Of a stretch of DNA of 64,000 nt, positions 2,604 to 22,323 are shown one piece after another. The stretch lies in assembly GCF_947568905.1 (NCBI RefSeq), contig NC_079172.1, forward strand, positions 15,810,001-15,874,000, in the 5' to 3' direction. Position 1 is the first letter of the stretch. Each line of letters begins with the position of its first letter. The stretch is from Ostrea edulis (lineage: Eukaryota). Under the pieces are notes generated by a model. The model was not told the DNA's origin. It saw only the letters and a list, made by a program, of their open reading frames with translations, and did not search any database. The translations under genes were made by a program, and so were the position numbers.

Positions 2604-2813
2604 TACCATAAAACCAATCACCCGTACAGATTTAAGAATTTTAGCTATGTGGGAAGACACCGTATATGTAAATAAAAGACAGTGGGTAAGAAACAAGATA
2701 TGAAATATGCACAATGCGAGACAAAATGTACGACTGTAGCAACCTAATTAAAATTAGATCCTTTAGACTGAGCAAATAAACAGATTGGATTGAGGTTCAA
2801 AGAACATGCTTAC

Positions 2814-2942
2814 CGGTTCGGCACCGTCTTGAAAAGTATTGTGAAGATATCGTTTCAGCAAGCACGTTTTGCCGGTGTTGTTGTTTCCTAATATCACAAG
2901 TTTCATTTGAAAACCACTGTCGCGGGAATTAGCCCAATTCAT
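2814..2942 (-). CDS. Rab24-like GTPase, first coding exon, copy V4 (not in ORF track)
   Basis: Hand translation MNWANSRDSGFQMKLVILGNNNTGKTCLLKRYLHNTFQDGAEP, 129 nt, P-loop intact, phase-0 GTAAGC donor. Confidence 0.8.
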
Positions 2943-4831
2943 TATAAAGCTGTATAATGAAAAGTGTTAAAACGAAAGTCGCAACTACATTGTATAAGTA
3001 GTTATTACCTGTTCGTTATTGTTTCATTGTTTTTTTTATCAGCGCGATTTATCTATCACTGATAGGAAGTCGATATCTTCAATTTATGGCCCACTTTCAT
3101 ATTTGTTTTAATACATATTGTTTATGTAGATAACTCATCTGCTTTAGGAGATGCATGTTAATGTTTAGACCTTAGTATGACACTAAATGTGGTAGTAGTG
3201 AGGGTTCTTTATCATGCCAACGCATATAGCAGCACAGGACCTACGTTTTTAAGTAATATTTAGTTCCGCCGCTTGGCGAAGAAACAGCCACTATGCCTTA
3301 GTTTGCCTTTCATTATAGAAAAGGGATAGAGAAGTAAATTCGGACCTCCCGTTTGGGAAGCAAGACCACCCCCCCCCCCCCCCCACATCGCATGCAATAC
3401 AATGTGCATGTAATTCAATCTAAAGGTCATAATGAAATATATAAATTAAAACAGAGTTCCATTAAATTACTGAAATAGATTCTTTTTCTCAATTTTATCA
3501 ACTGAAGAAGCTTTGATGAATAGACGAATTATTCTACAGAAAGCGATTTTCTACAGAATATAAATTTTATAGTAGTCATCCAGTTTTCAACATTCATAAA
3601 ATGGAATAGTCTGCGTCTATCAAGGAAAAATGTTTTCCTGAACATTTTATCAGCATCAATATCGAGAATTCGATTTACCTTTAGTGTCACAGAAAGTTTA
3701 GTTTTTATTTCTAATAGCAAAGGAAAGTTAACTCTAATAAACCAACTGGAAAAGTTCCATAGTTACGGCACATGCATGTTGCAATCGCATACCGAGGAAT
3801 ATGAAAATTAAACAGTGTCTTGATTTTTTTTTTGATTTTTTTTTTGTGGCAAATATCATGATGTGATCTAATTGTAAACTATCTCATTAAATATACTAAT
3901 ATACTAAAATTACCGTCCAAAAGTATGTTACAATTGTAATGCATTCCAAGATGTCAAATCTATCAATCAATTTCATGAAGATATTAACATTTTTAAACCA
4001 CTATCAAACAGGTTCCGTCCGTTAAAGTTACATTATTGATTTAACCTATGCAGAAAATCTACTAAATGTACACATGAAAATCAGGAAATTGGACGTCCAC
4101 ATAAGGGTTTGGTACAAGTATGTCTTAATTTGCAAGAGAGAATTGAAAATAGAATTTCATAACAGGACTGATACCCGCGCAGGACTCATCCATATTAGTG
4201 ATATTTAGATAGACGATGGCGTATTCCTAGTATATTTATATGGTGTTGTCACTTTTTTGTGAAATACTAAACATCCGCAACCCCTTGGTTAGTGTTGTAT
4301 CATATTGTAAATAACCAACAATGCCAATCAGACATTATCCATGTTCAAAGTGCTATAGAATTTACATTTGCAGCACATTTATCAATATTTTAAGGAGACA
4401 AATACTCCAGATGTTGTGTATAAATTATCAACCCATCAAGTAGAAACGCTATGTGTCTCTAGATGAAGTATACATCGTGAAATATGCGATCTTTGCGCCG
4501 AGAATAATAAGCCCAATAAGTGGTGCTTGGAAGTTTGACATTCCAAAGTATTTCCTTCAAAACGTGATTGTAGAAAATAGTTTTCTATGCATCAGAGAGT
4601 ATAATTTACTCAGCACTGTTTCAGGATCTACTGAGAAAAATGAGCTTCGTGTCACTTAATGACTTATACCCAGATCTGATATTCGAAGAAATCGTGAAAG
4701 AATCAGCCTCCACTTTGTGGTGAAAACATCTTACAATAGATGCCTATAAGAAACGATAAAGACCAAGAGAAAGTATCCATAGAATGAACACTCGTTATAG
4801 TCATGAGAGCGATGGACTTAATAGGCGGCTG

Positions 4832-5085
4832 GAAAGCCTCCGTGGCCGAGTAGTTAGAGCTCCGCGCTCAAAATCACACGGTCTCTCACCTCTGGTCGGC
4901 GTGGGTTCGAATCCCGCTCGTGCCGGTAAGTGAGAACGTTTGCCAGTTTATTTTTGGAAGGTCGGTTGTCTCTTCCCAGGTACATTGTATCTGGGTTCTC
5001 TCTTAGACCAATAAAAAACTGGACGCCACCAGATAACTGAAAACTTGTTGAGTGTGGCGGAAAACAGCAAAACAATCAATCAATC
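4832..5085 (+). mobile_element. Full-length tRNA-derived SINE with target site duplication
   Basis: A-box TGGCCGAGTAG, B-box GGTTCGAATCC, (AATC)n tail; 11-bp direct repeat ATAGGCGGCTG at 4821-4831 and 5086-5096. Confidence 0.9.
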
Positions 5086-5799
5086 ATAGGCGGCTGTATA
5101 CAATCTCATAGGCTTCAACTATCCCAGGCAAATTGAAATAAATCATAAGTTTGTGTGCTCCCATTGTCGCAAACCACGGTTTTGAGTCCACACTCCCTCC
5201 TGATGGAGAGAATCGAATAGAAGCACCCGTGGGTAACCGACGATGGTGTGCTCCTAGAGAATTAAATTGTTGAATGCCTTGAATGATATAGCCGTTTGAT
5301 AATTCTTATAAATATTTCTATGACAACACAACATGAAGAACACAATTAGATTGTATCTTATCTGGAGTTGGAATTCCAAATAATGTTAGGTGAAACAACG
5401 GACTAAAACAATCGTGTGTGTTGTGACAAATCTATGCATGTGTGTTTGCTGTATAAACTTTTGCATAAATATGCCCAACGGTGTTTGCAAACTACATTTC
5501 ATTCCTTTTAAGTTTGTCTAAATATTACATTAAAATCTTCATAAACCCAAAAAAAAAAACCTTTCATCATGCACCTTATTCGCTTGTTTCCAACGATCGT
5601 ATCAAGATGTTTCGCCATACAGTCAGTGTTGTTTACTTATGTTACCTAGTGAACCGGAACTACCCAGTGAAATTACAAGCGGTGTCAAGGGGGGTTACTT
5701 TGTATACCGGTAGCTAACCATTACATGCCCACTCACAGTATATCGAGTAACATGAACATACGAAAAACACTGTTCTGGAAAATCCTAGTGAAGTATGCT

Positions 5800-6320
5800 A
5801 AAAATCCATATCATATATGTATGTCCTATCACCCCGAGTGGCCCCATAACAGTCCGAGGGCTGATATGTGGTCCGAGGGCTGATATGTGGTCCGAGGGCT
5901 GATATGGGGTCCGAGGGCTGATATGTGGTCCGAGGGCTGATATGGGATCCGAGGGCTGATATGTGGTCCGAGGGCTAATATGGGGTCCGAGGGCTGATAT
6001 GTGGTCCGAGGGCTAATATGGGGTCCGCGGACTGATATGTGCTCCGAGGGCTAATATGGGGTCCGCGGACTGATATGGGGTCCGAGGGCTGATATGGGGT
6101 CCGAGGGCTAATATGGGGTCCGAGGGCTGATATGTGCTCCGAGGGCTGGTATGTGGTTCGAGGGCTAATATGGGATCCGAGGGCTGATATGTGGTCCGAG
6201 GGCTGATATGGGGTCCGAGGGCTGATATATGCTCCGAGGGCTGATATTTCGTCCGAGAGCTAATATGGGGTCCGCGGACTGATATGCCATATGAAATGGA
6301 TTTCAGCGTGTAACATACTC
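5800..6320. repeat. 20-bp minisatellite (GTCCGAGGGCTGATATGTGG, about 22 units) inside a small TIR-type element
   Basis: Tandem units at about 5854-6290; flanks GTATGCTAAAAATCCATATCATAT and ATATGAAATGGATTTCAGC..CATAC are imperfect inverted repeats. Confidence 0.75.
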
Positions 6321-6542
6321 AAATATTGTATACATACAGTATAGTGTTTTAGGAGGAAATTTTATCTGATAGCTGGGGTCCGAGGGCTGGTTTTACATGA
6401 TGATATTCTATCTATCACAGGCAGGTTACTCTGTTGCATTTTAAAGGTAGATCAAGGAAGATTTGGTACATTGCCCGACTATGGTAAAAACCTTCATGCA
6501 TGAATTTACTATTTAAAAACTTTAGTACATTAAATCACTGTA

Positions 6543-6972
6543 GTCATGAAAATCTTGATACATTGATATACCATGGTAAAATCTTGATACATTGATATAC
6601 CATGGTAAAAGTCTTGATACATTGATATACCATGGTAAAAATCTTGATACATTGATATACCATGGTAAAAATCTTGATACATTGATATACCATGGCAAAA
6701 ACCTTGATACATTGATATACCATGGTAAAAATCTTGATACATTGATATACCATGGTAAAAATCTTGATACATTGATATACCATGGTAAAAACCTTGATAC
6801 ATTGATATACCATGGTAAAAACCTTGATACATTGATATATCATGGTAAAAATCTTGATACATTGATATATCATGGTAAAAACCTTGATATATTGATATAT
6901 CATGGTAAAAACCTTGATACATTGATATATCATGGTAAAAATCTGGATACATTGATATACCATGGTAAAAAC
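6543..6972. repeat. 30-bp minisatellite CATGGTAAAAATCTTGATACATTGATATAC, about 14 units
   Basis: Direct inspection; it produces three spurious repetitive ORFs. Confidence 0.95.
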
Positions 6973-7248
6973 ATTGATTGTTACTAGCGAATACCTAATT
7001 TCCAGATTGATATGCATTTTTCGCGGACAGGTAGTTGATATGGATTATTGTGACGTCATCTGTATCACAGGGTGCGGAATTGAATAAAATGTACGTAAGA
7101 AATAAAGATCAAGTTTTCGTGAATGCTGCAGGATAACCTCTGAGGTCGAGAAATGTTGTTTAAAAATCTAAATGCCGATGGAGGCGTTTCAAACAACATT
7201 TCTCAACCTGTGATGTTATCCTGCACCATCCATGAAAACATGAACTAC

Positions 7249-7530
7249 CACAGATGCCTGAAGTGTGGGAAGCTTGTATAGATCTTATGTTCATAACACC
7301 AACACCCCCCCAACCCGAATAGTATCTCACAAGTGGTCATCTCAAAAGCTTACAGAAGGTACAAACTGACTATTCAGAACGACTTCTGAGGGTGATCAGT
7401 GGGGATATAACATATTTTGGATAAATGTTTGGTTCTGTATAAAATAATTTCATTGGGATGCGGGGGGTGGGAGTGGGGTGGGGTAGGTACATAAGATCTA
7501 TACAAGATATCCACACTTCAGGTGCCTGTG
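7249..7530. mobile_element. MITE with CACAG.. TIRs and 8-bp TSD (P/hAT-like)
   Basis: CACAGATGCCTGAAGTGTGG ... CCACACTTCAGGTGCCTGTG; flanks TGAACTAC/TGAACTAG. A related fragment lies at about 35870-36016. Confidence 0.7.
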
Positions 7531-8112
7531 TGAACTAGTACAACTCAAAAATATACAGCCGATCGTTTACCTATACAGGTTCGAATTAGGTCAACGTGAC
7601 GTCATGGCAGTTTCAGAAACGGATTTGTCGTAGGCTTACATATTTTTTGTGCTGACGAAAAAGGTGAGATGGTAGGGTATACAATATTTCATGCATTTAA
7701 TTTGATGTTGACGGATTATACATCTGCTTTGAATACACAATCCAAGATAAATATACACATGAGGAAGTTGGATAATTTGTACATCACCATGTTTGTTTAC
7801 GTCAATCAACTTCGAAGTAAAAACGATCGATTTGTATTGAATTAAAATTACTCTTCCGTCATTTATAAATTTGATTTGCAACATAAATTGATTGTGTTTT
7901 TCATTAATATAAAACTGAATCATCAGTTATCGACTTTATTGTTGTATTAGCGAAACACAAACTGCACGTGAGATGTTTATCGATTTTCTCATAATCCGTT
8001 CTTACGTATGAAAGTATATCGCAGAATAATGAACAGGGCATTCTTTTGGACTTTGCAATATCCATGGTAGAATGCAATATCACAATATTTAAAATTCATA
8101 TTGTATATGTAA

Positions 8113-8885
8113 GGTGAAGATAACGAATAGTGATCAATCTCATAACTCCTATAAGCAATACAAAATAGATAGTTGGGCAAACACGGACCCCTGGACACAC
8201 CAGAGGTGGGATCAGGTGCGTAGGAGGAGTAAGCATTCCCTGTTGACCGGTCACACCCAACGTGAGTCCTATATCTTGATCAGGTAAACGGAGTTATCCG
8301 CAGTCAAAATCAGTGTGCCAAGAACGGCTTAACAATCGGTATGAAACACGTCAGACAGCATCTGACCCAATGCGAGGTTGTATTGACAAACTAGATCGTT
8401 ATAACGACCATATAATTTGCGAAATGCTGACTTCAATCGAGACGGTTGAAACCCCTGTACCATCAACTTGTTTGTCAGTAGCTTACCTCGATTCAAAAAC
8501 TGACTATACGCAGAACAAGCTCTTGCATATCGAATCAGTTGAGATATATAAACACCATATGCAGGTGATAATGGAATATTGCTACATAAATATGGAGAAG
8601 CTGAAATCATCCCGTTTGTCATACAGTTGAGTTGTCAGTTTGCCGTTAATGCCTACTTTCAATAAAATATGTAAGTATGAAGCAGAAGTGGACGACTCTG
8701 TGGTGTCCTTTATTTCGAGCTCACAGGGATATATCAAATCGACATATGAATGAAAGCTATTATTGTTAATAGACAAAACGTCATCGATATATCTAAATGT
8801 CGAATTGAAGGCCACAGCGAGAGATTTTTTCTTCTCGCGTAAAAGTTTTTGAATATGAAATATGAAATAAGCTAATTGCTGCATG
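8113..8885 (-). mobile_element. 5'-truncated Penelope-like retroelement (RT C-terminal half and 3' end), frameshifted
   Basis: FNSTFRYIDDVLSINN (RT YIDD), YDKRDDFSFSI, NIPLSPAYGVYISQLIRYARACS; shares its terminus with 24228-26090. Confidence 0.85.
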
Positions 8886-9928
8886 CAAAAAAACAACAAC
8901 AACAATAACAAAAAAACAAACAAACAAACAATCACATAAATTGAATATTTACAGGATGTATTACAAAATCGTCGTCATGTAAATAACAACTGACTAGTAT
9001 AATGTAATATTTCCATCAAATAATGAAATCCCATTAGAGCATTTCTCACTCATATTGAGACGTCTCTAGCTTCAGTGTAAGTGATTTTATGATCTACGCA
9101 TGACGCTCAAGGCCGAAGCACTGAGAGTTATTTATCGGCCAACATAAATATCAATGTGAAATAATACACTGTGTCAATGAAGTACAATATTTATATTATA
9201 GTTATGTTACATCAACATCATATAAACAAATAAACCCTGTGCATATATTTAATATCCCATGCACTACATACATGTCAGACAGTTATGTTGTTACATTTCT
9301 TCAGAGTTTTTTTCAAAAAGGAAGTCAAAATATGGGACTGGTTTTACGAGAGGCAAGATGGAGTGGATGTATCAACCAACCAACCAACCCATCCCCCACC
9401 CCCGGATGTTTATACAAGTAGCGGACATCGTTTACCAAAGAGAGAGCAGATACATATGAATAGCTTAGTGTTACGTTATTGACAAACATCCAGAGTGAAT
9501 TATCTTGAATTAAAAGAAATATGGCAAGTTTAAATTCATTGTTGGAATGAGAAATCAGAGAACAGAATTAAAAAATAGTCGAGTACATTGTTGTAGTAGA
9601 TGAAAATTTGAAATGGAAGAGGGTAATTTACTGTGAATCACAGGATGTCGTGAAGAACTACATATACAAATGTGACTATAAAACAACATGACCTATATAT
9701 ATTGAGGTTTGTGAGCAGCACTTGAAATAAATTTTCAAATAATGGTGGACAATTCTCTAAAATCAATATAGTAAATTAAGGAGAGGGTCGAAGGTTTGTA
9801 TTGAGCGAAAAATTGGTACCATCTTCCAAGATCATGAATTATTGCTAATCCTTATATGTAAGACTTTAAATACAAAAATCAACAAAAGCAGCGCATGAAG
9901 TTTGATTTACATACAATGTGGTACTTAC

Positions 9929-10048
9929 AGCCTCTGTTTTATAAAATCTGTCATGGGCGAATCTGGCCACAAGGCATGTTTTCCCAGTAAAGGCATATCC
10001 TAGCAATACTGTTTTAACAGGTAATTCACTATCATCAGATTTCCCCAT
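9929..10048 (-). CDS. Rab24-like GTPase, first coding exon, copy V3
   Basis: MGKSDDSELPVKTVLLGYAFTGKTCLVARFAHDRFYKTEA, 120 nt, P-loop intact, phase-0 GTAAGT donor. Confidence 0.8.
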
Positions 10049-13000
10049 TCACGATGATTTCATTACCCGTCTACCACACACTTAATACACACAAACTATT
10101 GAGCGAGTGAATGCTCATCAGTTAAAACATACTTAACGTGTACAGATACTATGTTTCCCTGTCGATGGCTGTGCACAAGGAAAGTAAACATGATTTTCTG
10201 AAATATGACAACAAATCCACTGATTGTAATATGTGTATGATGAAATTATTTAAGGAAATTCTTTGGGAAAAACAAAGAAAAACGGGGATAGTAAAGAATA
10301 AGGGACTGGAAAGAAGAAGTCAATGGGTCACACTGCTCCAATGATTAATCTTGCCTATACATATATCTTCCCCTGTTGTACTCTACCAGGATCATAGTAT
10401 GAGGACACCTGTGTTTACACTTTGTGTGGGATGCTCTTTGATTTGACAAACATTATTCTTGAAGTTATTGGAAGACCCTCTTTTTAAAAAAAAAAAACTA
10501 TACATTCCTATGTACAAATGTAAACTACATGAGCACACTAAGCGCATATGAATTTGACAAATTGCAAATACAGATTTTAGAAGGAATTTTTATCATAGAT
10601 TTTTTCTTATTTTATGCATCCAATTCAGATTCTGCTTTGACTTCATAGGTCACGGTTGACCTCATAGGTCACGGTTTGAATAAATCTAACTTACGTTACA
10701 GGTAGATATTTGCAAATTACTTTAACAAAATTAGGCTTGTGGTTTTCAACTGACAGCGAAAAAAATATTTTAAGATTTATTTTAATACACAATCTCCCTA
10801 AATGTGGCCCCACCCTGACCTTTGACATCATGATTTGAACAATTTGCAATACGCACCACATAAAAAAACTTGTAAAATAATTTGACAAATTTAAGCCTTG
10901 TCCTTCTTGAGAACATTTTAATACATTTTCCCCATACATTCCTATACGTAAAACGTTTCAACCCAAACTGTGGTCTGTCCTGCCCCCTGGGGTCATAGGT
11001 TGAACACCATATGAGGATACCTACATACTAATATGACAAATTGTAGAATCCCTGTTCTTGAGAAGATATTTCAAAAAATTTTCTAACATAATCTTTTAAA
11101 ATATGAAACATGAGGCCCATTGGCCGTAATGGTCACCTGGCCATCCACAACCAAACAGTAAGTCTTTCAATTGACAAAAATATCAATGTTACTTACAATG
11201 TAGTTGCACAATGTACTTTATAAAATGATAGCATGATTTAATAAAATACAGTGAGCAAATATCGTAAAAATAAAATCAGTAAAAAATGTCATTTGTTATA
11301 TCAAACTTTATTTTGTGTTAAAGACATTCATCGTGTCATCAGCGCATTACCCCATACATTTGTGTATGTGCGCCCTTCCTTATCGAAGCAGTAGATGTAT
11401 GCAAGGTGAAGATAACGAACAGTGATATGTTTCTATTCAGCTGAGCCCTATACACTCACCCACATTCAAATAGGTGACTACACCATGGCAAAACTTTAAT
11501 AGATTTCTAAACGTTTGTCCAATACATCATTTATATTAAACATTTATATCATTTACAGCTCACTCGGGTAACAAAATAAAGATCTAAAGCAATAAAATGC
11601 ACTCATCCCCTTCAAGACCAGCACTTTTTCACAAGAGGGTATAAAATCTAAAACTTTTGTAGACATATTTACGCTTTCTCTAACTATGCATTTAATTTAA
11701 ATCATACTTCAAAAACTGAACAAATTCCAGCCATCAATCATTTTAACCCCGTCCCACCTGACCCTGACCTTTTACCCTAGGAACTATGAAATGCAAAACT
11801 TGTATATAACTATATACTTTCTCTAATATATGCATTCAGTTTACATTCAATGCCCGCAAAACAAAAAACAAATTTCAACCATTGGTAATTTAAAAAAAAA
11901 ACTCCCAAAACTTCTTGTCCCTGGTCTCCTGCTCCAGGGCACTTTATTAAGTTTTTGTTTACAGATTTATCCTCTGTTTAAAAGTGAATTATCAAAAGTA
12001 TTACTTAACGACGAAGATTTTGTGACATTAATAATAGCCATTTACATTTACTGGCACTATGACCTTAACTTCTCTCCTGGCTGGAGGTCATGAACTTTAG
12101 AAATTTTGCAGACAACTTTATCGTCTTTTTAAAAATGCATTCAGTTTACATTCAATATTAACAGAACAAAAGAAAGAGAGTAATTTATACATGTACTACA
12201 TGTGTATGACGATTTTTGCCCTGCTGTAGTCTGAACCATAATCCATGAACCAAGAAATTTACAATTTTGGTGGAAGACTTCCTGCTCTTTCTGAATATGC
12301 TGTCAGTTTTTATTTGGTATTAACAGAAGAAAAGAAGAAAAGTTTTGAACATTACAGAAATTAGTCCTTTCCTGGCACGGTAAATATCAAAATCATAAAA
12401 AGTCAGGAAAACGTCGGATATTTCGGACTATACAGACATTAACATTATATACCAATTTGGTCCCCACCCTAGAATCCAAACTCCTGACCGGGGGGGGGGG
12501 GGGGAGGGGTCATGAAATTCACAACCTTGATAGAGGATTTCCTAATCATTCAGTTTTCCTTTCAGATGTGAGAATAGTCAAAGTTTGGCAATATTGTCCC
12601 GTCCGTGGGTCCCTAGAGTGCAAAAGTAATAAAATGTATAATTTGGGTTCATCTTGTCATGTTAGTTACCAAATATAATGATTTTTAAATTATCAAAAAG
12701 AATTTGAATACGTGTATTTGTTTTGTTCAATGGCAGCTGAAATGCAAGTTCTGCTTTTCTAGACCTGACAGAGAAGTTTAAAATGTGTAAAGTTAACAAC
12801 GATATACTTTAATTCGTACATCTACCGGAAACCTAATTACATGCAAATGTCTTCTGAACAATACAATTGTTGATCATATTGTACATTAAAGCTAGTACAT
12901 TGTTACCCGATTGAACATCAACGGAAAAATCTCGAGTGTTTAACAAAATCATTGGAGGAAGTTTATAAATATTCAGGCAAACACACTCACTAACACACAC

Positions 13001-13143
13001 TCACTACAACACGTTTTGTTTGAATAGAATTGTGTTCATAGCTCACATGATTTGGATTACAGTTGTATATGTACCTTCGATTTTATTATTGATTTTCTAC
13101 TATTACAATAATATAAGTTAACTGTTCTAATTCAAGGGCAGGT

Positions 13144-13201
<58 letters not shown>

Positions 13202-13564
13202 AAGATTCTACAACAGAAAAGTTAAAAAGACAGATTTGCTAATGGGATTGTGTGTGTATTTGTGTATACTATATAACTATTTTCGTGTCAACTTAACATT
13301 GGGCGATTCTTCAGGTGGATGAAAAATGTTTGAGGTGAAATGATTTCCTCATTGGTAAACAATGATATACCTATTATGTACGTATACAAGTACAGGTGAA
13401 ATACATATATTGAATTTATATTTACTGTATTAAAACCTGGACTGTGTGTGTGTGTGTGTGTGGGGGGGGGGGGGTTGTAACACGATTGTTTCTGTTCTAC
13501 CCCTTACATGCATAGCTCCTGTTTTCCTATAAGTTGTACCTCATGTAATTAGATTTCCTAAAGA

Positions 13565-13880
13565 AAAGATAGCGATTGCGGTAACCTAGTCGTAGAGTGC
13601 TAATTTTACGAACGGTCGGAGGTCCAGGGTCACGTCAAATTAAGACATTAAAATAAGTAGCTACTGTTTCTCTATCAAGCGTCCGACGTTGTAAGCGAAA
13701 GTTTCGGGTGTTTTGGACACTAGTAAATCTAGAGGTCCTGTGTAACGGTAAGCGTTAGCACGATTCTAACGGAACCCTCAACAGTGTGGCTTTGCGAGCC
13801 ATGCATACGTCATGCATTGTCACATCCATCATCTGGTGACGCTTTTCTATGGGTAAAAAATTCTCAAATGGGGTGTAATT
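13565..13880 (+). mobile_element. Degenerate tRNA-SINE related to the 59879-60215 family
   Basis: Decayed tRNA-like head, GAGGTCCTGTGTAACGGTA..GCACG core, GGTGACG..TATGGGTAAAAAATTCTC 3' end. Confidence 0.5.
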
Positions 13881-13889
13881 ACAAAAAAG

Positions 13890-13922
<33 letters not shown>

Positions 13923-14341
13923 TCACCTTGGCCCATATCTGAAGACTTTCCATATATATTTGCATGTAAAACCTTAGTCCCTATTATGGCCCAAACTACC
14001 CTTTGCAAACTTGAATCTACACTATATCAAAAAGCTTTCATGTAAATGACAACTTCTTAGGCCCAATGGTTCTTAAGAAGAAGATTTTTAAAGCTTTTTC
14101 CTATATTTGTATGTAAAACTTTGACACACCCCCCCCGCACTTGTGGCCCCATCCTACCCTCCGGGGGCCATGATTTGAACAAACTTGAATCTGCAATATG
14201 TCCCAGTGGTTCTTGAGAAGAAGATTTTTAAATGACCCCACCCTATTTTTGCATTTTTGTGATTATCTCCCCTTTGAAAGGGACATGGCCCTTCATTTGA
14301 ACAAACTTGAAAGCCCTTCACCCAAGGATGCTTTTGGCCAT

Positions 14342-14379
<38 letters not shown>

Positions 14380-14445
14380 TCGAAAATGTGAAAAGTTTAA
14401 CAGACAGACGGACAGACAGACAGACGGACAGACGACGGACAAAAA

Positions 14446-14490
<45 letters not shown>
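13890..14490 (+). mobile_element. HINE/Helentron-type non-autonomous element with satellite-like core
   Basis: 5' CAAGAGGCCCATGGGCCACATCGCTCACCTGAG; 3' GACA microsatellite, AAAGCTCACTTGAGCTTT hairpin and inverted subTIR CTCAGGTGAGCT. Partial copies at about 10380-11150 and 17330-17700. Confidence 0.8.
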
Positions 14491-14492
<2 letters not shown>

Positions 14493-14669
14493 TCTAAGGA
14501 AATAATAAGAAACGAAAGAAAATAGTAAACCTTCAACTTGCATGTTTCTTCAAATCAAATTTCTCTATTTTATTTCGATAAGAGATAAAATTCAAATTCT
14601 ATCGGTACACCCTGTATAATAATGAACAGAATGTTTACAGAAACATTCTCACTACGTATTACTACTTAC

Positions 14670-14792
14670 ACTTTCACTCTTTTCTGCAAACTGGCCACAT
14701 GCATACCTAGTTACGAGACAAGTTTTCCCTGCGTCGCACCTCCCCAATGTCACGACTTTGAAAGAGCAAGATAGTGTTCCCGATGAAGCCAT
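14670..14792 (-). CDS. Rab24-like GTPase, first coding exon, copy V2 (not in ORF track)
   Basis: Hand translation MASSGTLSCSFKVVTLGRCDAGKTCLVTRYACGQFAEKSES, 123 nt, GxxxxGKT P-loop, phase-0 GTAAGT donor. Confidence 0.8.
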
Positions 14793-16240
14793 TGCTGCAG
14801 TCTCATTAAACATTACAATGTTAATTTTGGCAACTTATCTTTTATTTCCTATCAAATTTCCTTGGTTACATGGCTCGAAGGACTGAAATCAAGGAAATTA
14901 TTTGTATCGGTTGTTCTTCCGTTTTCAACTCGGAATGAAGCCGTACCACAACACAAGTACATAGCAGATGTTCGAATGAAATTAAAATTAAAATGCTTTA
15001 TTTCAACGAGTATATGTTTTTTTCCCCAGTATTTATTAAAGAAAGTGTAATCATTAATGAAATAGATATCGAAACTTTTTTAAACCGGCCGACTTCCGGA
15101 ATGAATGAAAGAGCTGGATTAGAGGGGTGACCGTTTGACCGAAAACTTTGCATTTAGTTACATTTTGTCTCAATTATCATTAGAATTCTTCGTATCACGT
15201 ACCATTTTAAAATACAATGCACAAGTGTCATTATAAATAAAATAAATGACTAACATGTTTACTGTTTTATTTTTAGCACTGGAATTAAATAAACACAAAC
15301 ATTTTCATAATAAATAAACAGGCATGTACCGGATGGAAACACTTCATAAAAAATAGCACTGCATTTTGTGCGGGGTAAAGTCTCGTGCTAGCAAGATCAA
15401 ATGGTCAAATTTCACCTTTAAGAACAAATGAAACATATTGCAGGAAATAATTTCCTCTTTCAATTGAAGTCTTAATTTTTACAGATTATATTTTATTGAA
15501 TAACACGTGATCGGAATAGTTTTTGTTATCTTTTTAAGTTTTGCTTTTTCAACCAAAAAAAGAAAAAAAGACACTTCCATCATAAGATCATTGATTTACT
15601 ACAAATGAACATCTTGCATGTCAATGTGTCCCCATGTCATCATTTTGTGAATCAACATAATTTCATAGCATTATCAATTTTTAGTGTTATTTTTAAATCA
15701 AATCACTGCACTTTCGATACTCAGTTGTTAAATCAATTATTAATGGACAAAATTATACCACTTAATTTTGGTTTTATCTACATGCATAACTGGACCCCCA
15801 ACGGAAATAATCCCTTATGGCTTTTGGAGGCTTTCCAACATGGAGTGTGTTTTCAACTTACATGTAACTATTCTACATGCATGTACATACTAGAAAAAGA
15901 GATATTTCCAAGTATAGTAATCACGATTAAGTGATTTCTTAAATTTTACAGTGATTCAGTTTCTGTGATACTCTTAACCATGATTGTAAAGATGTCGTTT
16001 ACCAATTGAATGTGCTTCTTATCTGATTAACATAAATTAATAAAAACGTTGGTGTAATCGATACACAAGGTATTGTTCACTTTAATCCCGGCGATCTGAA
16101 ATTGTCGTGTGGTATAATTATAGGCGGAAATCAAATTAAATCGGCTTAATTACATGCAATACCAGAGGTAATTGACACGAGAGAACCCGTCTTCCTGATG
16201 TAATTATCAAAGATAATAGAAAACATGAAGAAAACACAAA

Positions 16241-16455
16241 GAGGTGTCCGGGAAGCGCAGAGGTACCGCTCTCGTTTCTCACCGCTGAAATCCCGAGTTC
16301 GATCTCCGTGATTAGCAGTGGTTAATTGTATGCAAGAGGGTATGGTGGTCCCCCGTTCGAACACGTGGGTTTGCTTCGGGTACTCCGGTTTCCTCCCACA
16401 TAAATGGCCCCCTAGCGCCAACAACCATGCGTCTACCCATTGGAAATAAGCTTTA
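16241..16455 (+). mobile_element. tRNA-derived SINE with V-domain-like core
   Basis: tRNA-like head (GAGTTCGATCTCC B-box-like) plus GTGGGTTTGCTTCGGGTACTCCGGTTTCCTCCCACA, which resembles the V-SINE core. Confidence 0.7.
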
Positions 16456-18661
16456 CGTATATTTGTATGTGTAGATGTATATACCGAATAAAGTTTCTTT
16501 TTCTTCTTTTTTTTTTTACCTATATACTCTTGATCATATCCACTGCCTATGCATTGAACAAATTTCAAAAGAAATCTATATACAAAATATGAAAATTCTA
16601 GTATTCTTTTTTTTAATAGTTCAGGAAATATTGAATACGTCAGATTTTAATGAAAAGTAGGTCAAACTTCCAAGTCAAGACCAAACACCAAGATATAACA
16701 AGAACTAGCCATTAAGAATCTACATATATACAAAATATGAAAGCTCTGCCTTTAATAGTTGAAGAGATAATGATTACACTGAAAGTCCGGTCTTTTAAAA
16801 AGTAGGTCAAGGTTACAATAACAAACACGATTGTAACAAGGTCTTGTCTAGCTGCAGAACTGTAGCTCTCTGAGAAAACATTGAGAGAGATCAGAGAGCT
16901 ACAGATCCATCCCTTATAAAAACCTTCGATTTACGACACACAAAAAGCTACGCACGGTCGAGGCCTCATATCGTTGTATTCTTATGTTGCCGTCTCGTTT
17001 TAATATCAAAAAATTTCTAACATATTTTCCTACTATGCTTGTGTCCAAACATACCTTCAAATATTTATTAAAGGTTTTTATAAGGGGTGGATCTGTAACT
17101 CTCTGATCTGTCCCAATATTTTCTCAGAAAGCTACATATGAAAAAAATATCGTAAATAGTTCAGGACATCCATGTATAAAATACTTCAGATTTTTATTAA
17201 AAGTGGGTCAAACTTCCAGATCAAGGTCACAAAATTACACAAGTCTTGTCGTAAAGAATGTATATACAAACTATGAAAGCCCTATCTTAAATAGTTCAAG
17301 AGATATTTTTAAAGATTTTTTTTCTATATAACAGCATGTAAAAATTGTTTCCCCTATTGTGGCCACACACTACCCCCAGGGACCATGATTTGAATAAACT
17401 GGAATTTTCTCTATAATAGGAAGCTTTCATGTAAATTTCAACTTTTTTACCCAGTGGTTTTTGAGAAGAAGATTTTCCCTATATATTTCCATGTAAAACT
17501 GATACCTATTGTGGCTCAACTCTACCCCCGGAGGCCATGATTTATCAAACTTGAATCTACATTTATTTATGACAAGAAGCTTTCATGTAAATTTCCACTT
17601 TTTTGGTCCAGTGGTTCTTGCGATGACTTTTTAAATGACTCTACCTTGAGAAGAAGATTTTAAAGATTTTCCCTATATATTCGCATTTAAAACTTTGATT
17701 CCCAATTGTCGTTGTAGATACACATTGGCATTGAAGAGTTACCCCCCTGAAAGTCGCTCTTTATCTACAATGATAAGGATTCCCAAATGATTTGGACAAA
17801 TTTGCAGTGGCGCCCCCCCCCCCCTAAAATTTTCAAATTTAAGGTAAATCGCGGTATCTTGCTTCGGAAAATGTACTAAACGATTAAAGAAGCAATAATT
17901 TCTTCCACTCTCGGAGAAATAAATGACAAAATCTTTTGATTTCTTGAATTACTTTATTGGGAGAACTTAATTTTTTCCAAAAAAAAAACACCTTAAAATG
18001 TGGGTCATTTTATTAATTTCATCTTATTAAAATGATAGAAAATAGTACAAATGACTAAATAGGAGAAATATTTCAAGCCCCATAAAATCTGTAAAATCCA
18101 GGAGCTTCGTCCTGGACCCACTGCCTCATAAAGTGGCGCCCCCCCCCCCCCCCCCCCGTAACCACAATTCCTGGATCCGCCCCTGATTTGTATTGAGGGT
18201 TCATATATTAACTGGAAAGATCTTACCAAATGTGCAACAAAAATCAATAAGAAGTATTTTTTTCCATGCCAGTCTTGCTTATCCTTTAAAGTTTGTTTTC
18301 CTCTTCCAGTTTGTGAACAATATCAGAACATTATGGTTGGTAAGCGTACATATGTAAGTCAAAATCTCCAGGATCTGACCTGGATTTCTCGAAGCAATCT
18401 TAAGTCGAAACTCGGACTTAAGTCGGAGATTTTACTCAAATCCTGACTGTTTAAATAAAAGTAAACTCAAATTTAAGTTTGAGATTTTTTCGAGAAATTC
18501 AAGCTCGCGTGGTTGTCTTGAACTGTAGCTCTCTGATGGGTGGGGGGTAGGATAGACCAGAAAGATACAGATCTACACACTGAAATAAAATCAACAACTA
18601 CAAAAAAACTCCCGATTTACAATGCACCTTCCTCCGAAAAAGATAGAGAATTAACACAAAA

Positions 18662-19097
18662 GGACTAGTGTGAAACTAGTGTGTAAAGCTATCCGTAATG
18701 AACAAACAGGCACTAGTGTTAAACTAGTGTGTAAAGCTATCCGTAATGTACAACCAGGTACTAGTGTGAAACTAGTGTGTAAAGCTATCTGTAATGAACA
18801 CCAGGTACTAGTGTGAAACTAGTGTGTAAAGTTATCCGCAATGAACAAACAGGTACTAGTGTGAAACTAGTGTGTAAAGCTATCTGTAATGAACAAACAG
18901 GTACTAGTGTGAAACTAGTGTGTAAAGCTATCCGTAATGAACAAACAGGTACTAGTGTAAAACTAGTGTGTAAAGCTATCCGTAATGTACAACCAGGTAC
19001 TAGTCTGAAACTAGTGTGTAAAGCTATCCGTAATTAACAACCAGGTACTTGTGTGAAACTAGTGTGTAAAGCTATCCGTAATGAACAACCAGGCACT
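18662..19097. repeat. ~49-bp minisatellite ACTAGTGTGAAACTAGTGTGTAAAGCTATCCGTAATGAACAAACAGGT, about 9 units
   Basis: Direct inspection; explains ORF 18813-19037. Confidence 0.95.
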
Positions 19098-20385
19098 TGG
19101 ATCGAAAGGAAATTGTTTAACTAAAGATTGAATTTAGCTAGTGGCTAAAACGAACAAACCCCAATACCTAAATACAACTAGACACACACAACACATATCT
19201 CTACAAAAGAAAAGCCTGAGACCCATGGTTAAAGTCGGCATGGCTCTATCATGTCTATAGGGGTAGCTCTGAAGATAAACACGTGTACTCTAATTTGATC
19301 AACTTTGTTTCTTTCTTCTTAACAATTTTACTTACAAATAGTGAAAGGGATTGGGCAGTAGCCATAGCCTATTTTAGCACTCCCCTGTGAAATGAACTTG
19401 ATTGAATTCATTTTGTACGGTAAAAAGTTCGTATGGTTTGCAGCAAGTGTCTTTAACTGAACATTTAACTCATATTACTTAGGAAAGGATAAGGTAGTTG
19501 ATATGTCTCTTCCTATACTCATTGACAAGGTTTAGTTGACGGATGAGGCCAAAACATCATAAAGTCTACGTTCCTTCTCACCTGAACAAATACCTAACAA
19601 TTGATTAGAATCTATTGTGCAAATAAATGAAACGCTGTGAAAACAAATTTACCATGCATATAATATTAGTGCAACATATATGTACACCACGTGCTTACAT
19701 TCATGATCGTAATAATTCTGTGTCGTTTCATGAAAGAAGATATCGACATTGTATCATATTCATGTTGTTATACATTTTGTACAGTGCAAATAAAACGATG
19801 CGACCATTGGTTAGACTCGCGCAGTCCTAGGACGTGTATAATGCGCGTGGATAGCTGGTAAACTCGTTCATTACGTGCCTTACATGTAAGATTATGTGTT
19901 ATTTCGCAGTAAGTTTAATACACTCCCATCCTCCGTAAATCCCCACCCTCCACATTATAGTAAATATACTGAATATCAAATGCTATTCGTGTGCACTGCA
20001 AATGTTGAATTATAGTGAGGAGGGCCCAAATTAACACCACCTGTAATACACTGTAATTAGTCGAACCTTGGTGATATGTACGCCAGGTGCTCGGCTTTAA
20101 TAAGGACCCTCTCCACACTTTATACAAATGGGTTTTTTTTCCAGAAATTAAGAAAATTATATCGTATATAAATATGTAGTTCTTGCGATTATCTGGACTT
20201 TTTCAGCAGGGGGTATATCTCATTCTGTCCCAGGAAAAATCTCCAAAGACGATCGAAGAAGTGATGATCAGAGATTTGAAATGGCAAAGATACATTCCGT
20301 AACTTTATCTTGGTCTCATATACAATGATGCATAATGATGAAACCACTTCATTTGATTACAAATTGTGTATAACATTGTAATATT

Positions 20386-20470
20386 GTATAACATTGTAAT
20401 ATTGTATAACATTGTAATATTGTATAACATTGTAATATTGTATAACATTGTAATATTGTATAACATTGTA
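20386..20470. repeat. 18-bp tandem repeat (ATTGTATAACATTGTAAT)n
   Basis: Direct inspection, about 5 units. Confidence 0.9.
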
Positions 20471-21407
20471 AATTTAATTTCAGTTTATTGTATTGTACAC
20501 AAAAGTGTATATTGCTCTAACTGCAGAACAGTACATGCAACATGAACTTTGAACTCTCCCTAAACATATGGCCTAGTCTCATTTTCACATTAACCTCTAG
20601 CTGGTGTTAATTTTCTATGAATGAAATATTCTTGAGTACACCAAATAAGCCAAGTTTGTCACAGTACAATATATTACAATGAGACAGATTGCTATTAAAC
20701 ATCACTAACTGGTTACCATCCCCTATTGGGTGTAGACGTGTGCTAATAGAATACACATAATAATATTAAACAATTTCAACAAATTACCATTACTTATTCC
20801 ATTAAAATAAAGTAGAAGTAATATTGTAATTATGAAAACAAGACCACTTTTAATCTAATTATGGGAAGAAATTTGCCTGGACTTGAAATATTTTGATTAC
20901 TTTTGATCACATTTAAATATAATTACTTTATATATAAAAAAGAAAAGTTTAAAAAAAAAAACTTTTTTACAATTACAACATTATTGTTTTACAACATACA
21001 GTGAACATTTTTTCATTGGTAGCTTTCCTGAGAAGGATATTCCTATTAAATGAATTTGCAGGAAATACTAAGAAGTAAAACCTTTTTGTTACACAGATTT
21101 CTTGTATCATTTGTACATAATTTATGTATGCTATAGATCTATGGTGAACAGAAGTCCCAATCTTTTGACATTTATTTGTCAACATCAACTGTATCAATTA
21201 CACTGTGAATTAACCTAGTATACATAATACTAAGTTGCTTGATATATTAGCTTTGGCCCACTGAGCACTCAGTGATTGTTATTTCACATGTACACGACTG
21301 CAGTGCAGTGGACAAATGCATCCTATAAACTTCATCTAATGACATTTTGAAGTCGAAAAACTGATCTCCATCTAAAGATATCATACATGTGTCTATAGTG
21401 TAAGTAG

Positions 21408-21580
21408 AGAAAATTATCCCTTTCCTCAACTGTACTTTACAACCAGTGGTCAGTTTAAACATCTGTAAGGGAGTGGTATGATTGGATCATATTAAAAGGG
21501 AGCGGAGTGATTGGATCATACAGACATTTAAAAATGACCATTGGTTGTGAAATACAACTGAGGAAAGGGATAATTTTCTC
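21408..21580. mobile_element. Palindromic MITE-like element
   Basis: AGAAAATTATCCCTTTCCTCAACTGTA..ACAACCAGTGGTCA..TCTGTA is mirrored by TACAGA..TGACCATTGGTTGT..ACAACTGAGGAAAGGGATAATTTTCT. Confidence 0.7.
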
Positions 21581-22194
21581 CAATAGAAGTATTTGACACA
21601 AGTATTCGTATTCTACTTTCGAAATGAGATGAGGGTTTTTTTTTTATCAATTTTAAAATGTTATTAGATCTACATGGTCATGATGGTGATGGAAAAACTT
21701 GAATGTTCAGCAGGCCTTGGTTAATGTCGACAGTTTACATTAATAAATTGGTGAAATCTTCTAATTTATTCAAATTTTTCAACTGGATAGGTGTAAGTAA
21801 TAAATTTACAACATGTTTGGACCGATTAGATAAGTACTGGACCAGTACCTACACAGTTATGCTTAAAAGCTGAGGAGCTATAACTTCTTTCTAATTATAA
21901 GAATACAAGCTGAAAGCTACATAGTGCAGTGTTAAATGCCTCTGTTGAATCTTATTTCTATTGCTGAAATTGGGTAGCCTATAATAAACGTTACAAACCT
22001 TCCTCTATTATACACATCAAGGCTACCCAGACTGTGAACGTGCATCAACTTGAATGGTCGGTCTTCATATTAGATTTCATGAAAGCATTATAAAATTATG
22101 TTGTACACACCAGTATGGTACTAAATAACCATACGAATGTACATCTATTGAGCACACACACGATAAGAAAGAAAACAGAAAAGTGTCTACTTAC

Positions 22195-22323
22195 GTTTTG
22201 ATAATTGCTGGTAAATCTTTCGTGGACATATCTAGAGACGAGGCATGTTTTCCCAACGTAAGCTTTTCCTAACAGAACGATTTTGATCTGTAGCTGTCCA
22301 TTTTTATTGCCACTGGATGCCAT
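22195..22323 (-). CDS. RAB24: Rab24-like GTPase, first coding exon, copy V1 (closest to canonical Rab24)
   Basis: MASSGNKNGQLQIKIVLLGKAYVGKTCLVSRYVHERFTSNYQN, 129 nt, then a GTAAGT donor (phase 0). Resembles Rab24 [25 protein letters not shown]...YQN, ending just before TIGAAF. Confidence 0.85.

What the first reader, a model, noticed from the sequence alone, without database searches (positions are those of the whole stretch)
2814..14792. Variable exons keep the P-loop but replace the switch-I-proximal residues
Seen: V1 ends HERFTSNYQN (Rab24-like), while V2 ends CGQFAEKSES, V3 HDRFYKTEA and V4 HNTFQDGAEP. The P-loop spacers differ as well (KAYV, RCDA, YAFT, NNNT). Established: in Rab GTPases the P-loop and the switch I segment before the G2 Thr shape nucleotide handling and effector/GEF/GAP contacts. 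Inference: exon choice could create isoforms with the same C-terminal membrane targeting but different GTPase kinetics or effectors. The aromatic residue upstream of the G2 Thr is lost in V2-V4.
Basis: partly seen in the sequence, partly recalled or inferred. Interest (0 to 1): 0.7.

Follow-up and report, generated by a model that had tools for sequence, protein, structure and literature searches.

The report
Oyster Rab24 variable first-exon array
The flat oyster's Rab24-like GTPase gene has four interchangeable first exons, each supplying its own start codon, nucleotide-binding loop and first half of switch I, and this layout is conserved and transcribed in other oysters but seems undescribed in the literature.

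Summary
On the minus strand lie four ATG-initiated exons: V1 22195-22323, V2 14670-14792, V3 9929-10048 and V4 2814-2942. Each encodes strand beta1, an intact GxxxxGKT loop, helix alpha1 and the first half of switch I. Each ends in phase 0 at a GTAAG donor, one codon before the G2 Thr.

The window is Ostrea edulis. RefSeq isoform X1 is V1 plus the constant part, and X2 is V4 plus the same constant part. The constant exons lie beyond the window start.

Crassostrea virginica, Saccostrea cucullata and Magallana gigas have the same ordered array of 5-6 V exons before one constant set. A scallop has a single exon 1. Three M. gigas transcript contigs join V1, V3b or a V4-type exon directly to exon 2, with unrelated 5'UTRs.

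Between O. edulis and C. virginica, synonymous sites are saturated (pS 0.7-0.8). Replacement differences are lower: pN is 0.12-0.15 for V1/V2 and 0.34-0.38 for V3/V4.

So this is a protocadherin/UGT1-style variable-first-exon cluster acting on the catalytic core of a Rab. Different kinetics or effectors remain inference. Use of V2 and V3 in O. edulis itself is not shown; no RNA runs were available. The scan had noted the same array before (s1-281874).

The parts
22195..22323 (-). V1: canonical Rab24-type first coding exon (43 codons, ATG at 22323-22321). It encodes beta1, the P-loop GKAYVGKT, alpha1 and switch I up to YQN.
   Evidence: It is identical to the N-terminus of RefSeq Rab-24-like isoform X1 of Ostrea edulis (P0138). 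It is 79-91% identical to V1 of three other oysters.
22189..22194 (-). V1 5' splice site GTAAGT, phase 0
   Evidence: The orthologous donor is used in M. gigas transcript L008.
14670..14792 (-). V2: alternative first coding exon (41 codons from the ATG at 14792), with P-loop GRCDAGKT, ending CGQFAEKSES. A further in-frame ATG lies at 14813, but orthologues start at the position of 14792.
   Evidence: It is 80-88% identical to V2 of C. virginica and Saccostrea. Against C. virginica pN is 0.15 and pS 0.69. V2 isoforms are annotated in S. echinata, S. cucullata, C. virginica and M. gigas. There is no O. edulis model.
14664..14669 (-). V2 5' splice site GTAAGT, phase 0
9929..10048 (-). V3: alternative first coding exon (40 codons), with P-loop GYAFTGKT, ending HDRFYKTEA. 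It is one codon shorter than the others between GKT and the donor.
   Evidence: It is 75% identical to S. cucullata V3. It shares the RFYKTEA ending with M. gigas V3a. Against C. virginica pN is 0.34 and pS 0.81. There is no O. edulis model.
9923..9928 (-). V3 5' splice site GTAAGT, phase 0
2814..2942 (-). V4: alternative first coding exon (43 codons), with P-loop GNNNTGKT, ending HNTFQDGAEP.
   Evidence: It is identical to the N-terminus of RefSeq isoform X2 of O. edulis (P0139, XP_048744976.1). The AlphaFold model of P0139 is a canonical Rab fold, with pLDDT at or above 90 over residues 11-40, and matches Rab5 with target-normalised TM-score (TMt) 0.92.
2808..2813 (-). V4 5' splice site GTAAGC, phase 0

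Best explanation
The four exons are a tandem array of mutually exclusive variable first exons of one Rab24-like gene of Ostrea edulis. Each V exon carries its own 5'UTR, start codon and a 5' splice site. Transcription probably starts at a promoter just upstream of the chosen exon (inferred). The chosen exon's donor is joined to the acceptor of constant exon 2, whose first codon is the G2 Thr of TIGAAF. V exons lying further downstream are removed as part of the intron. The constant exons lie beyond the low-coordinate end of the window. Every isoform therefore shares the rest of switch I, the interswitch region, switch II with the Rab24-typical DTAGSE, G4, G5 and the C-terminal Cys pair. What is swapped is the equivalent of Ras residues 1-34: the N-terminal tail, beta1, the four free P-loop positions, alpha1 and the first half of switch I. 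Residues needed to hold nucleotide are kept in every cassette: GxxxxGK[ST] and the aromatic residue at the Ras F28 position. The Ras 11-14 and 29-34 positions are type-specific. The most likely consequence is that the isoforms bind nucleotide but differ in intrinsic or GAP- and GEF-driven cycling and in partner recognition. That consequence is inferred and untested. The array arose by tandem duplication of exon 1 in the oyster lineage and has been kept under purifying selection.
For: Exon anatomy: ATG, intact P-loop and a phase-0 GTAAG donor at the same codon position in all four exons.

No other Rab exon is in the window.

The window is O. edulis, and RefSeq X1 and X2 differ only in V1 versus V4.

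The same order, V1-(Vb)-V2-(Vx)-V3-V4 followed by one constant set, is seen in C. virginica L004, S. cucullata L005 and M. gigas L009. All donors there are GT.

The scallop locus L006 has one exon 1 with the same boundary before TIGAAF.

Three Logan transcript contigs from different runs share 98.6-99.6% identical sequence from the exon 1/2 junction through the 3'UTR. Upstream of the junction they are unrelated.

Those contigs map on L009 as first exon, collinear with its own 5'UTR (158 nt for V3b), joined directly to exon 2. Intervening V exons are skipped.

Selection among paralogues: pS 0.65-1.0 against pN 0.19-0.38.

Selection among O. edulis and C. virginica orthologues: pS 0.69-0.81 against pN 0.12, 0.15, 0.34 and 0.38, with flanking introns unalignable.

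Type-specific endings are kept across genera.

The V4 and V2 isoform models are confident Rab folds.
Against: No RNA data for O. edulis could be obtained. Every run found held DNA.

O. edulis V2 and V3 have no gene model among the database hits. Their use in this species rests on conservation and on expressed orthologues.

The O. edulis constant exons were not seen as DNA.

Promoters were not mapped. Transcript contigs have incomplete 5' ends, so an unseen shared leader exon is not strictly excluded.

V4 has an acceptor-like pyrimidine tract and CAG just before its ATG.

V3 and V4 evolve fast (42-56% identity between genera). That could mean relaxed constraint rather than specialisation.

No biochemical property of any isoform is known.
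Confidence: 0.85

Rival explanations
1. V2-V4 are decaying duplicates of exon 1 (pseudo-exons) that are not used. Only V1 makes protein.
For: O. edulis RefSeq models among the hits cover only V1 and V4. No RNA holder was found for V2. V3 and V4 types diverge quickly between genera.
Against: V4 is in a RefSeq isoform. All four exons keep ATG, open frame, P-loop and donor, although synonymous sites and introns are saturated between O. edulis and C. virginica. V2 is as conserved as V1 (pN 0.15 against 0.12). V2-, V3- and V4-type orthologues are annotated or assembled as spliced mRNAs in other oysters.
Confidence: 0.05
2. The exons are internal, mutually exclusive cassette exons (Rab6A/A' style), spliced from a shared non-coding leader exon under one promoter.
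For: V4 has a pyrimidine tract plus CAG 8 nt before its ATG. The transcript contigs' 5' ends are incomplete, with UTRs of only 24-158 nt.
Against: The 5'UTRs of the V1, V3b and V4-type M. gigas transcripts share no sequence. Each is collinear with the genomic DNA directly upstream of its own exon: 55 nt for V1 and 158 nt for V3b. Every V exon has its own ATG.
Confidence: 0.07
3. They are first exons of four separate tandemly duplicated Rab genes, or cassettes captured from other Rab subfamilies.
For: The paralogous exons are only 32-42% identical. Short PDB searches give weak best hits to different Rabs: Rab33B and Rab5 for V2, Rab30 and Sec4 for V3. M. gigas has a second overlapping gene model that runs past the end of the locus.
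Against: No other G-domain exon is in 64 kb. There is a single constant set after the array in three other oyster genomes. Transcripts share a near-identical constant part and 3'UTR. The phase-0 boundary before TIGAAF is the same as in the single scallop exon 1. The shared GKTCL..R signature is present. The PDB hits are all weak (E of 1e-4 or worse), and so are those of V1.
Confidence: 0.03

Closest known systems
Multiple-variable-first-exon clusters (clustered protocadherins, UGT1A, GCNT2); definition in PMC3325998 and PMC1885805
   Same: A tandem array of similar first exons, each with its own start codon and 5' splice site, joined one at a time to a common set of downstream constant exons. 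Intervening variable exons are skipped. Exon number changes between lineages.
   Different: The variable part is only about 40 codons. It encodes part of the catalytic core of a small GTPase (P-loop, alpha1, half of switch I), not a ligand- or substrate-binding domain. The array is small, 4-6 exons. Per-exon promoters and any choice mechanism are not shown.
Rab24 (atypical Rab; Erdman et al. 2000 as cited in PMC12847187)
   Same: The constant part has the Rab24 hallmark Ser in place of the catalytic Gln (WDTAGSERY). Its best matches across animals are Rab24. V1 has the Rab24-type YQN-TIGAAF switch I.
   Different: Other molluscs and vertebrates show one canonical N-terminus. Oysters add V2-V4 (and Vb, Vx) cassettes. 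The oyster C-terminus is C-x-x-C-F-K-R, not the mammalian CCHH (the latter from memory).
Rab6A/Rab6A' and other small-GTPase splice isoforms such as Rac1b, Cdc42 and K-Ras 4A/4B (from memory)
   Same: One GTPase gene gives isoforms by use of duplicated or alternative exons.
   Different: Those swap internal or last exons and change a few residues or the membrane anchor. Here the first exon, with the start codon and the G1 motif, is exchanged among 4-6 strongly diverged versions.
Rab5a P-loop Ala30 mutant series (PDB 1n6i, 1n6l, 1n6n, 1n6o, 1n6p, 1n6r; listed)
   Same: These are engineered changes at the Ras-G12-equivalent P-loop position in the closest solved relatives. The V exons vary naturally at that position: Ala in V1, Cys in V2, Ala in V3, Asn in V4.
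   Different: They are laboratory point mutants of another Rab. Their effect on hydrolysis is recalled from memory and was not checked. No data exist for Rab24 cassettes.

Membership tests
Rab24 subfamily of Rab GTPases | Ras-superfamily G domain with G1 GxxxxGK[ST] | tested here: met
   Pfam Ras PF00071 matches all four exon peptides from profile position 1. The full isoforms carry PF00071. GxxxxGKT is intact.
Rab24 subfamily of Rab GTPases | Closest relatives are Rab24 orthologues across animals | tested here: met
   A search with the constant part of P0138 returns mollusc and vertebrate Rab-24 at 46-65% identity. V1 groups with exon 1 of other molluscs' Rab24.
Rab24 subfamily of Rab GTPases | Atypical residue (Ser) in place of the catalytic Gln of DTAGQE | tested here: met
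   WDTAGSERY is present in P0138, P0139 and all oyster isoforms. This lies in the constant exons, outside the window.
Rab24 subfamily of Rab GTPases | Rab24-type switch I start (aromatic-Q-N before TIGAAF) | tested here: not met
   Met by V1 only. V2, V3 and V4 have SES, TEA and AEP at those positions. V2-V4 isoforms are therefore Rab24 in their constant part but not in this segment.
Rab24 subfamily of Rab GTPases | Low GTPase activity, poor GDI binding and poor prenylation | not testable with these tools
   These are biochemical properties, known only from the literature cited in PMC12847187.
Multiple-variable-first-exon cluster (Pcdh/UGT1 type) | Tandem array of paralogous first exons in one orientation | tested here: met
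   Four exons on the minus strand at 22.3, 14.8, 10.0 and 2.9 kb. There are 5-6 in three other oysters.
Multiple-variable-first-exon cluster (Pcdh/UGT1 type) | Each variable exon has its own start codon and 5' splice site | tested here: met
Multiple-variable-first-exon cluster (Pcdh/UGT1 type) | One shared set of constant exons, with one variable exon per mRNA | tested here: met
   O. edulis X1 and X2 share residues 44-218. M. gigas transcripts map as one V exon plus the same exons 2-8. It was not seen at DNA level in O. edulis, because the constant exons are outside the window.
Multiple-variable-first-exon cluster (Pcdh/UGT1 type) | Each variable exon is preceded by its own promoter | tested here: inconclusive
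   The 5'UTRs are distinct and collinear with their own upstream DNA in M. gigas. Transcription start sites and promoters were not mapped, and there are no O. edulis data.
Mutually exclusive internal cassette exons (Rab6A/A' type) | Shared upstream exon, with a 3' splice site used on each cassette | tested here: not met
   The 5'UTRs of three isoform transcripts are unrelated, and no upstream exon appears in their mapping.

The most novel reading that the evidence does not exclude
Oysters have turned one Rab into a small family of cassette GTPases. Alternative promoters swap the P-loop, alpha1 and first half of switch I (the Rab subfamily-specific regions SF1 and SF2, from memory) on a constant Rab24 body. 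This would give isoforms with distinct nucleotide cycling and partners, used in tissue-, stage- or infection-specific ways, for example in autophagy or xenophagy. It would be the first variable-first-exon cluster known to act on the catalytic core of a small GTPase. It has been expanding and contracting within Ostreidae: 4 exons in Ostrea, 5 in C. virginica, 6 in Saccostrea and in M. gigas.
Probability: 0.35. Interest if true: 0.8.

Novelty: new variant of a known kind. Interest (0 to 1): 0.6.

Why it matters
Rab identity is normally fixed by gene duplication, with one gene per Rab. Here a single locus appears to make 4-6 versions of a Rab that differ exactly in the nucleotide-contacting loop and the first half of the effector switch, while keeping the same membrane anchor and remaining surfaces. 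If the isoforms differ in function, this is a natural domain-swap experiment. It would show which residues set Rab24 cycling and partner choice. It would also show that the variable-first-exon strategy can diversify an enzyme's catalytic core. In practice, the O. edulis annotation seems to lack two conserved isoforms (V2 and V3). Expression studies that count 'Rab24' as one transcript would also merge distinct proteins.

Tried and rejected
RNA evidence in this species. Both run searches (5.5 kb covering V2-V3, then the V2 exon alone) returned only DNA-like holders. The single read-laying run showed genomic contigs covering introns, with no junctions at the V donors. Expression in O. edulis could therefore not be tested.

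Constant exons in the window. Motif scans, translation of 1-2763 and tblastn found none.

Search with the 43-aa V1 exon against cluster representatives. This gave only genomic read-through ORFs and generic Rabs.

Word search with an alignment of the four exon ORFs. This found only V1 read-through ORFs and the window's own V3 ORF, because of the length filter.

Exact look-ups of O. edulis X1 and X2. They are not on record, so the O. edulis constant exons and their distance from V4 remain unseen.

Flank comparison of the four exons. There is no similarity outside the exon cores, so the duplications are old.

Tree of 27 exon peptides. With 44 columns most forks are open. Only the V2 clade and part of the V4 clade have support, and V1 sits with the outgroup exon 1s. 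It was not used for more than that.

Short-exon PDB searches as a proxy for subfamily origin. All hits are weak and uninformative.

Literature searches. Rab24 with oyster or Crassostrea, alternative first exons with P-loop, and tandem exon duplication in Rab GTPases all found nothing relevant.
Full report
**What is in the window.** The window has 31-40% G+C and many repeats, as expected for an animal genome. A six-frame scan for G1 motifs finds four Rab-like P-loop exons, all on the minus strand, at about 22.3, 14.8, 10.0 and 2.9 kb. Read base by base, each begins with ATG and runs without a stop through beta1, GxxxxGKT and alpha1. Each ends after a complete codon at GTAAGT (V1, V2, V3) or GTAAGC (V4).

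The coding parts are:
- V1: 22195-22323
- V2: 14670-14792, with a further in-frame ATG at 14813
- V3: 9929-10048
- V4: 2814-2942

The distance from GKT to the donor is 20 codons in V1, V2 and V4, and 19 in V3. Sensitive tblastn finds no fifth copy in the 64 kb. Motif scans, translation of the remaining 2.7 kb and tblastn find no other Rab-like exon, with no DTAG and no TIGxxF. All four peptides match Pfam Ras from profile position 1.

**The copies are old but constrained.** Similarity among the four copies is confined to the exon core. The flanks do not align. Over the ungapped 23-codon core, synonymous differences are saturated (pS 0.65-1.0), while replacement differences are 0.19-0.38. Twelve residues are invariant, among them the beta1 Lys, GKTCL, an Arg in alpha1 and a Phe.

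**Species and the rest of the gene.**
- A search of cluster representatives with V1 gave only genomic read-through ORFs of a related oyster and generic Rabs.
- One of those ORFs (P0002) was used as a length-compatible query restricted to its V1 part. This retrieved full-length proteins.
- RefSeq 'ras-related protein Rab-24-like isoform X1 [Ostrea edulis]' (P0138, 218 aa) has an N-terminus identical to V1, followed by TIGAAF. The window is therefore O. edulis.
- The exon boundary falls exactly before the G2 Thr.
- A search with the constant part alone (residues 44-218) returned O. edulis isoform X2 (P0139). X2 is V4 on the identical constant part (XP_048744976.1).
- The same search returned multiple isoforms from Saccostrea echinata, S. 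cucullata, Crassostrea virginica, M. angulata and Magallana gigas. In these, different N-terminal cassettes sit on one constant part.
- No O. edulis isoform with V2 or V3 is among the hits.
- The constant part has the Rab24 signature WDTAGSERY. Its next-best matches are Rab24 of molluscs and vertebrates.
- Two C-terminal Cys are invariant across the Rab24 alignment.

**Comparative anatomy.** Three other oyster loci were fetched.

| Locus | Species | Order of V exons | Constant exons |
|---|---|---|---|
| L004 | C. virginica | V1, Vb, V2, V3, V4 | one set, 3.6 kb after V4 |
| L005 | S. cucullata | V1, Vb, V2, Vx, V3, V4 | one set |
| L009 | M. gigas | V1, Vb, V2, V3b, V3a, V4a | one set |

- Every one of these exons has an ATG, GxxxxGK[ST], an aromatic residue at the Ras F28 position and a GT donor.
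- The order matches the O. edulis window, which lacks Vb.
- The scallop Pecten maximus has one exon 1 with the same boundary before TIGAAF. It has no extra copy in the gene or in 10 kb upstream.
- The other mollusc Rab24 proteins that were read all show the canonical PYQN/PYHN-TIGAAF N-terminus; one, Haliotis, has two extra residues before TIGAAF.
- The array is thus present in every oyster locus examined and absent from the scallop locus.

**Orthology and selection.**
- V1 types are 79-91% identical between genera. V2 types are 80-88% identical.
- V3 types are 42-56% identical, and 75% between Ostrea and Saccostrea. V4 types are 42-53% identical between genera.
- For O. edulis against C. virginica, pS is 0.69-0.81 and the adjacent introns do not align. 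pN is 0.12 (V1), 0.15 (V2), 0.34 (V3) and 0.38 (V4).
- All four are therefore kept as coding sequence. V1 and V2 are under strong constraint, V3 and V4 under weaker constraint.
- The swapped switch-I-proximal residues are conserved within types. V1 has [TAS]SNYQN in all four genomes. V2 has CGQ[FY]A plus an acidic tail. V3 has RFYKTEA, identical in Ostrea and M. gigas V3a. V4 has H/Y-x-[TA]-F, with only M. gigas V4a carrying Ala (HHAF), followed by a variable tail.
- The P-loop of V2 keeps a Cys at the Ras-12 position in all four genomes.

**Transcripts.**
- Three Logan contigs from three different runs (L003, L007, L008) each hold an uninterrupted 219-221-codon CDS.
- They are 98.6-99.6% identical to each other from exactly the exon 1/2 junction through the 3'UTR. 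Upstream of the junction they are unrelated.
- On the M. gigas locus, L008 maps as 5'UTR plus V1 (9946-10128), then exon 2 (27429) and the further constant exons.
- L003 maps as a 158-nt 5'UTR plus V3b (19593-19876), then the same exons. It skips V3a and V4a.
- L007 maps as a V4-type exon, 90% identical to V4a, followed by the same exons.
- The predicted donors are thus used, one V exon is used per mRNA, and each 5'UTR is collinear with the DNA in front of its own exon. This is the behaviour of alternative first exons, not of internal cassettes.
- Cluster membership shows V1, V2, V3a, V3b, V4a and V4b forms assembled in Logan run assemblies and/or annotated in RefSeq. The V1 form is the most frequent, on 66 contigs for one member.

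**Structure.**
- The AlphaFold model of the O. edulis V4 isoform has mean pLDDT 81, with values at or above 90 over residues 11-40.
- The model of the S. echinata V2 isoform has mean pLDDT 80.5, with block means of 88 and 92 for residues 11-30.
- Both are canonical small-GTPase folds.
- The V4 model superposes on Rab5 with target-normalised TM-score (TMt) 0.92 and rmsd 1.2 A.
- By sequence the best solved relative is Ypt51 of the Rab5 group, whose switch I starts KEP-TIGAAF. Absence of the aromatic residue three positions before the Thr is therefore normal in some Rabs and does not mark a dead protein.
- Models without nucleotide cannot say anything about kinetics.

**Interpretation.**
- Shown: the four exons exist; their anatomy; their conservation; a shared constant part for V1 and V4 in O. 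edulis; and the splicing pattern and separate 5'UTRs in M. gigas.
- Inferred: one promoter per exon; use of V2 and V3 in O. edulis; and functional differences between isoforms.
- The swapped segment corresponds to Ras residues 1-34. It includes the P-loop positions equivalent to Ras 11-14. Engineered mutants of Rab5a at one of these, Ala30, have been crystallised (entries); their effect on hydrolysis is recalled from memory only.
- It also includes alpha1 and the loop before switch I, which in Rabs belong to the subfamily-specific regions used by effectors (from memory).
- Type-specific conservation of just these residues across genera argues that they matter.
- Rab24 itself is known as an atypical Rab with deficient GTPase activity, GDI interaction and prenylation (Erdman et al. 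2000, as cited in PMC12847187).

**Novelty.**
- The isoforms are present in RefSeq annotation, with up to eight in M. gigas.
- Full-text searches found no paper on Rab24 in oysters or Crassostrea, or on alternative first exons carrying a P-loop, or on tandem exon duplication in Rab GTPases.
- The architecture matches the multiple-variable-first-exon class defined for UGT1 and protocadherins (PMC3325998, PMC1885805). Here it is applied to the catalytic core of a small GTPase.
- I class it as a new variant of a known kind.
- The scan's own index holds the same array as finding s1-281874.

**Limits.**
- No RNA run for O. edulis was served, and the only read-laying run showed DNA contigs.
- The O. 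edulis constant exons were not seen as DNA.
- The exon tree has too few columns to resolve most forks.
- Other Rab subfamilies were not included in the tree, so in-situ duplication is argued from position, exon phase and shared signature rather than from phylogeny.

Noticed in passing
window 13890-14492, 11340-11523, 12076-12443: Very high-copy repeats in the V2-V3 intron. Summed contig depth is 1e4 to 2e6 in four DNA runs, with many internal joints. One starts about 180 nt after the V2 donor.
   Followed up: no
window 14813-22195 (between V1 and V2): O. edulis has no counterpart of the 'Vb' exon. That exon lies between V1 and V2 in C. virginica (L004 12025-12141), S. cucullata (L005 13755-13871) and M. 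gigas (L009 about 12938-13015). It is either lost or diverged beyond detection.
   Followed up: partly
window 2943-2975, minus strand: A pyrimidine-rich tract ending in CAG lies 8 nt before the V4 ATG and looks like a 3' splice site. Spliced after V1-V3 it would shift the frame and reach a stop within seven codons.
   Followed up: no
L004 24001-25251, minus strand (C. virginica): A 416-aa gene with Neur_chan_LBD and Neur_chan_memb domains is nested, on the opposite strand, in the intron between V4 and constant exon 2.
   Followed up: no
L009 14645-40431 (M. gigas): A second, overlapping Rab-24 gene model starts at V2 and runs past the end of the locus. The V4b-type transcript L007 is only 90% identical to the V4a exon DNA. 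This suggests a further downstream copy or a divergent haplotype.
   Followed up: partly
window 6522-7017 and 18670-19124: Tandem repeats give long repetitive ORFs in several frames: a YHGISMYQ-type unit and a KLVCKAIRNEQTGTSV-type unit. They lie in the V3-V4 and V1-V2 introns.
   Followed up: no
window 37-50 kb; L009 1-3791: A HECT-domain gene lies upstream of V1 in M. gigas. The scan's notes place HECTD2 at 37-50 kb of this window. The neighbourhood is therefore syntenic between the two oysters.
   Followed up: partly
O. edulis RefSeq, outside the window: Only isoforms X1 (V1) and X2 (V4) appear among database hits for O. edulis. The conserved V2 and V3 exons seem unannotated there.
   Followed up: partly
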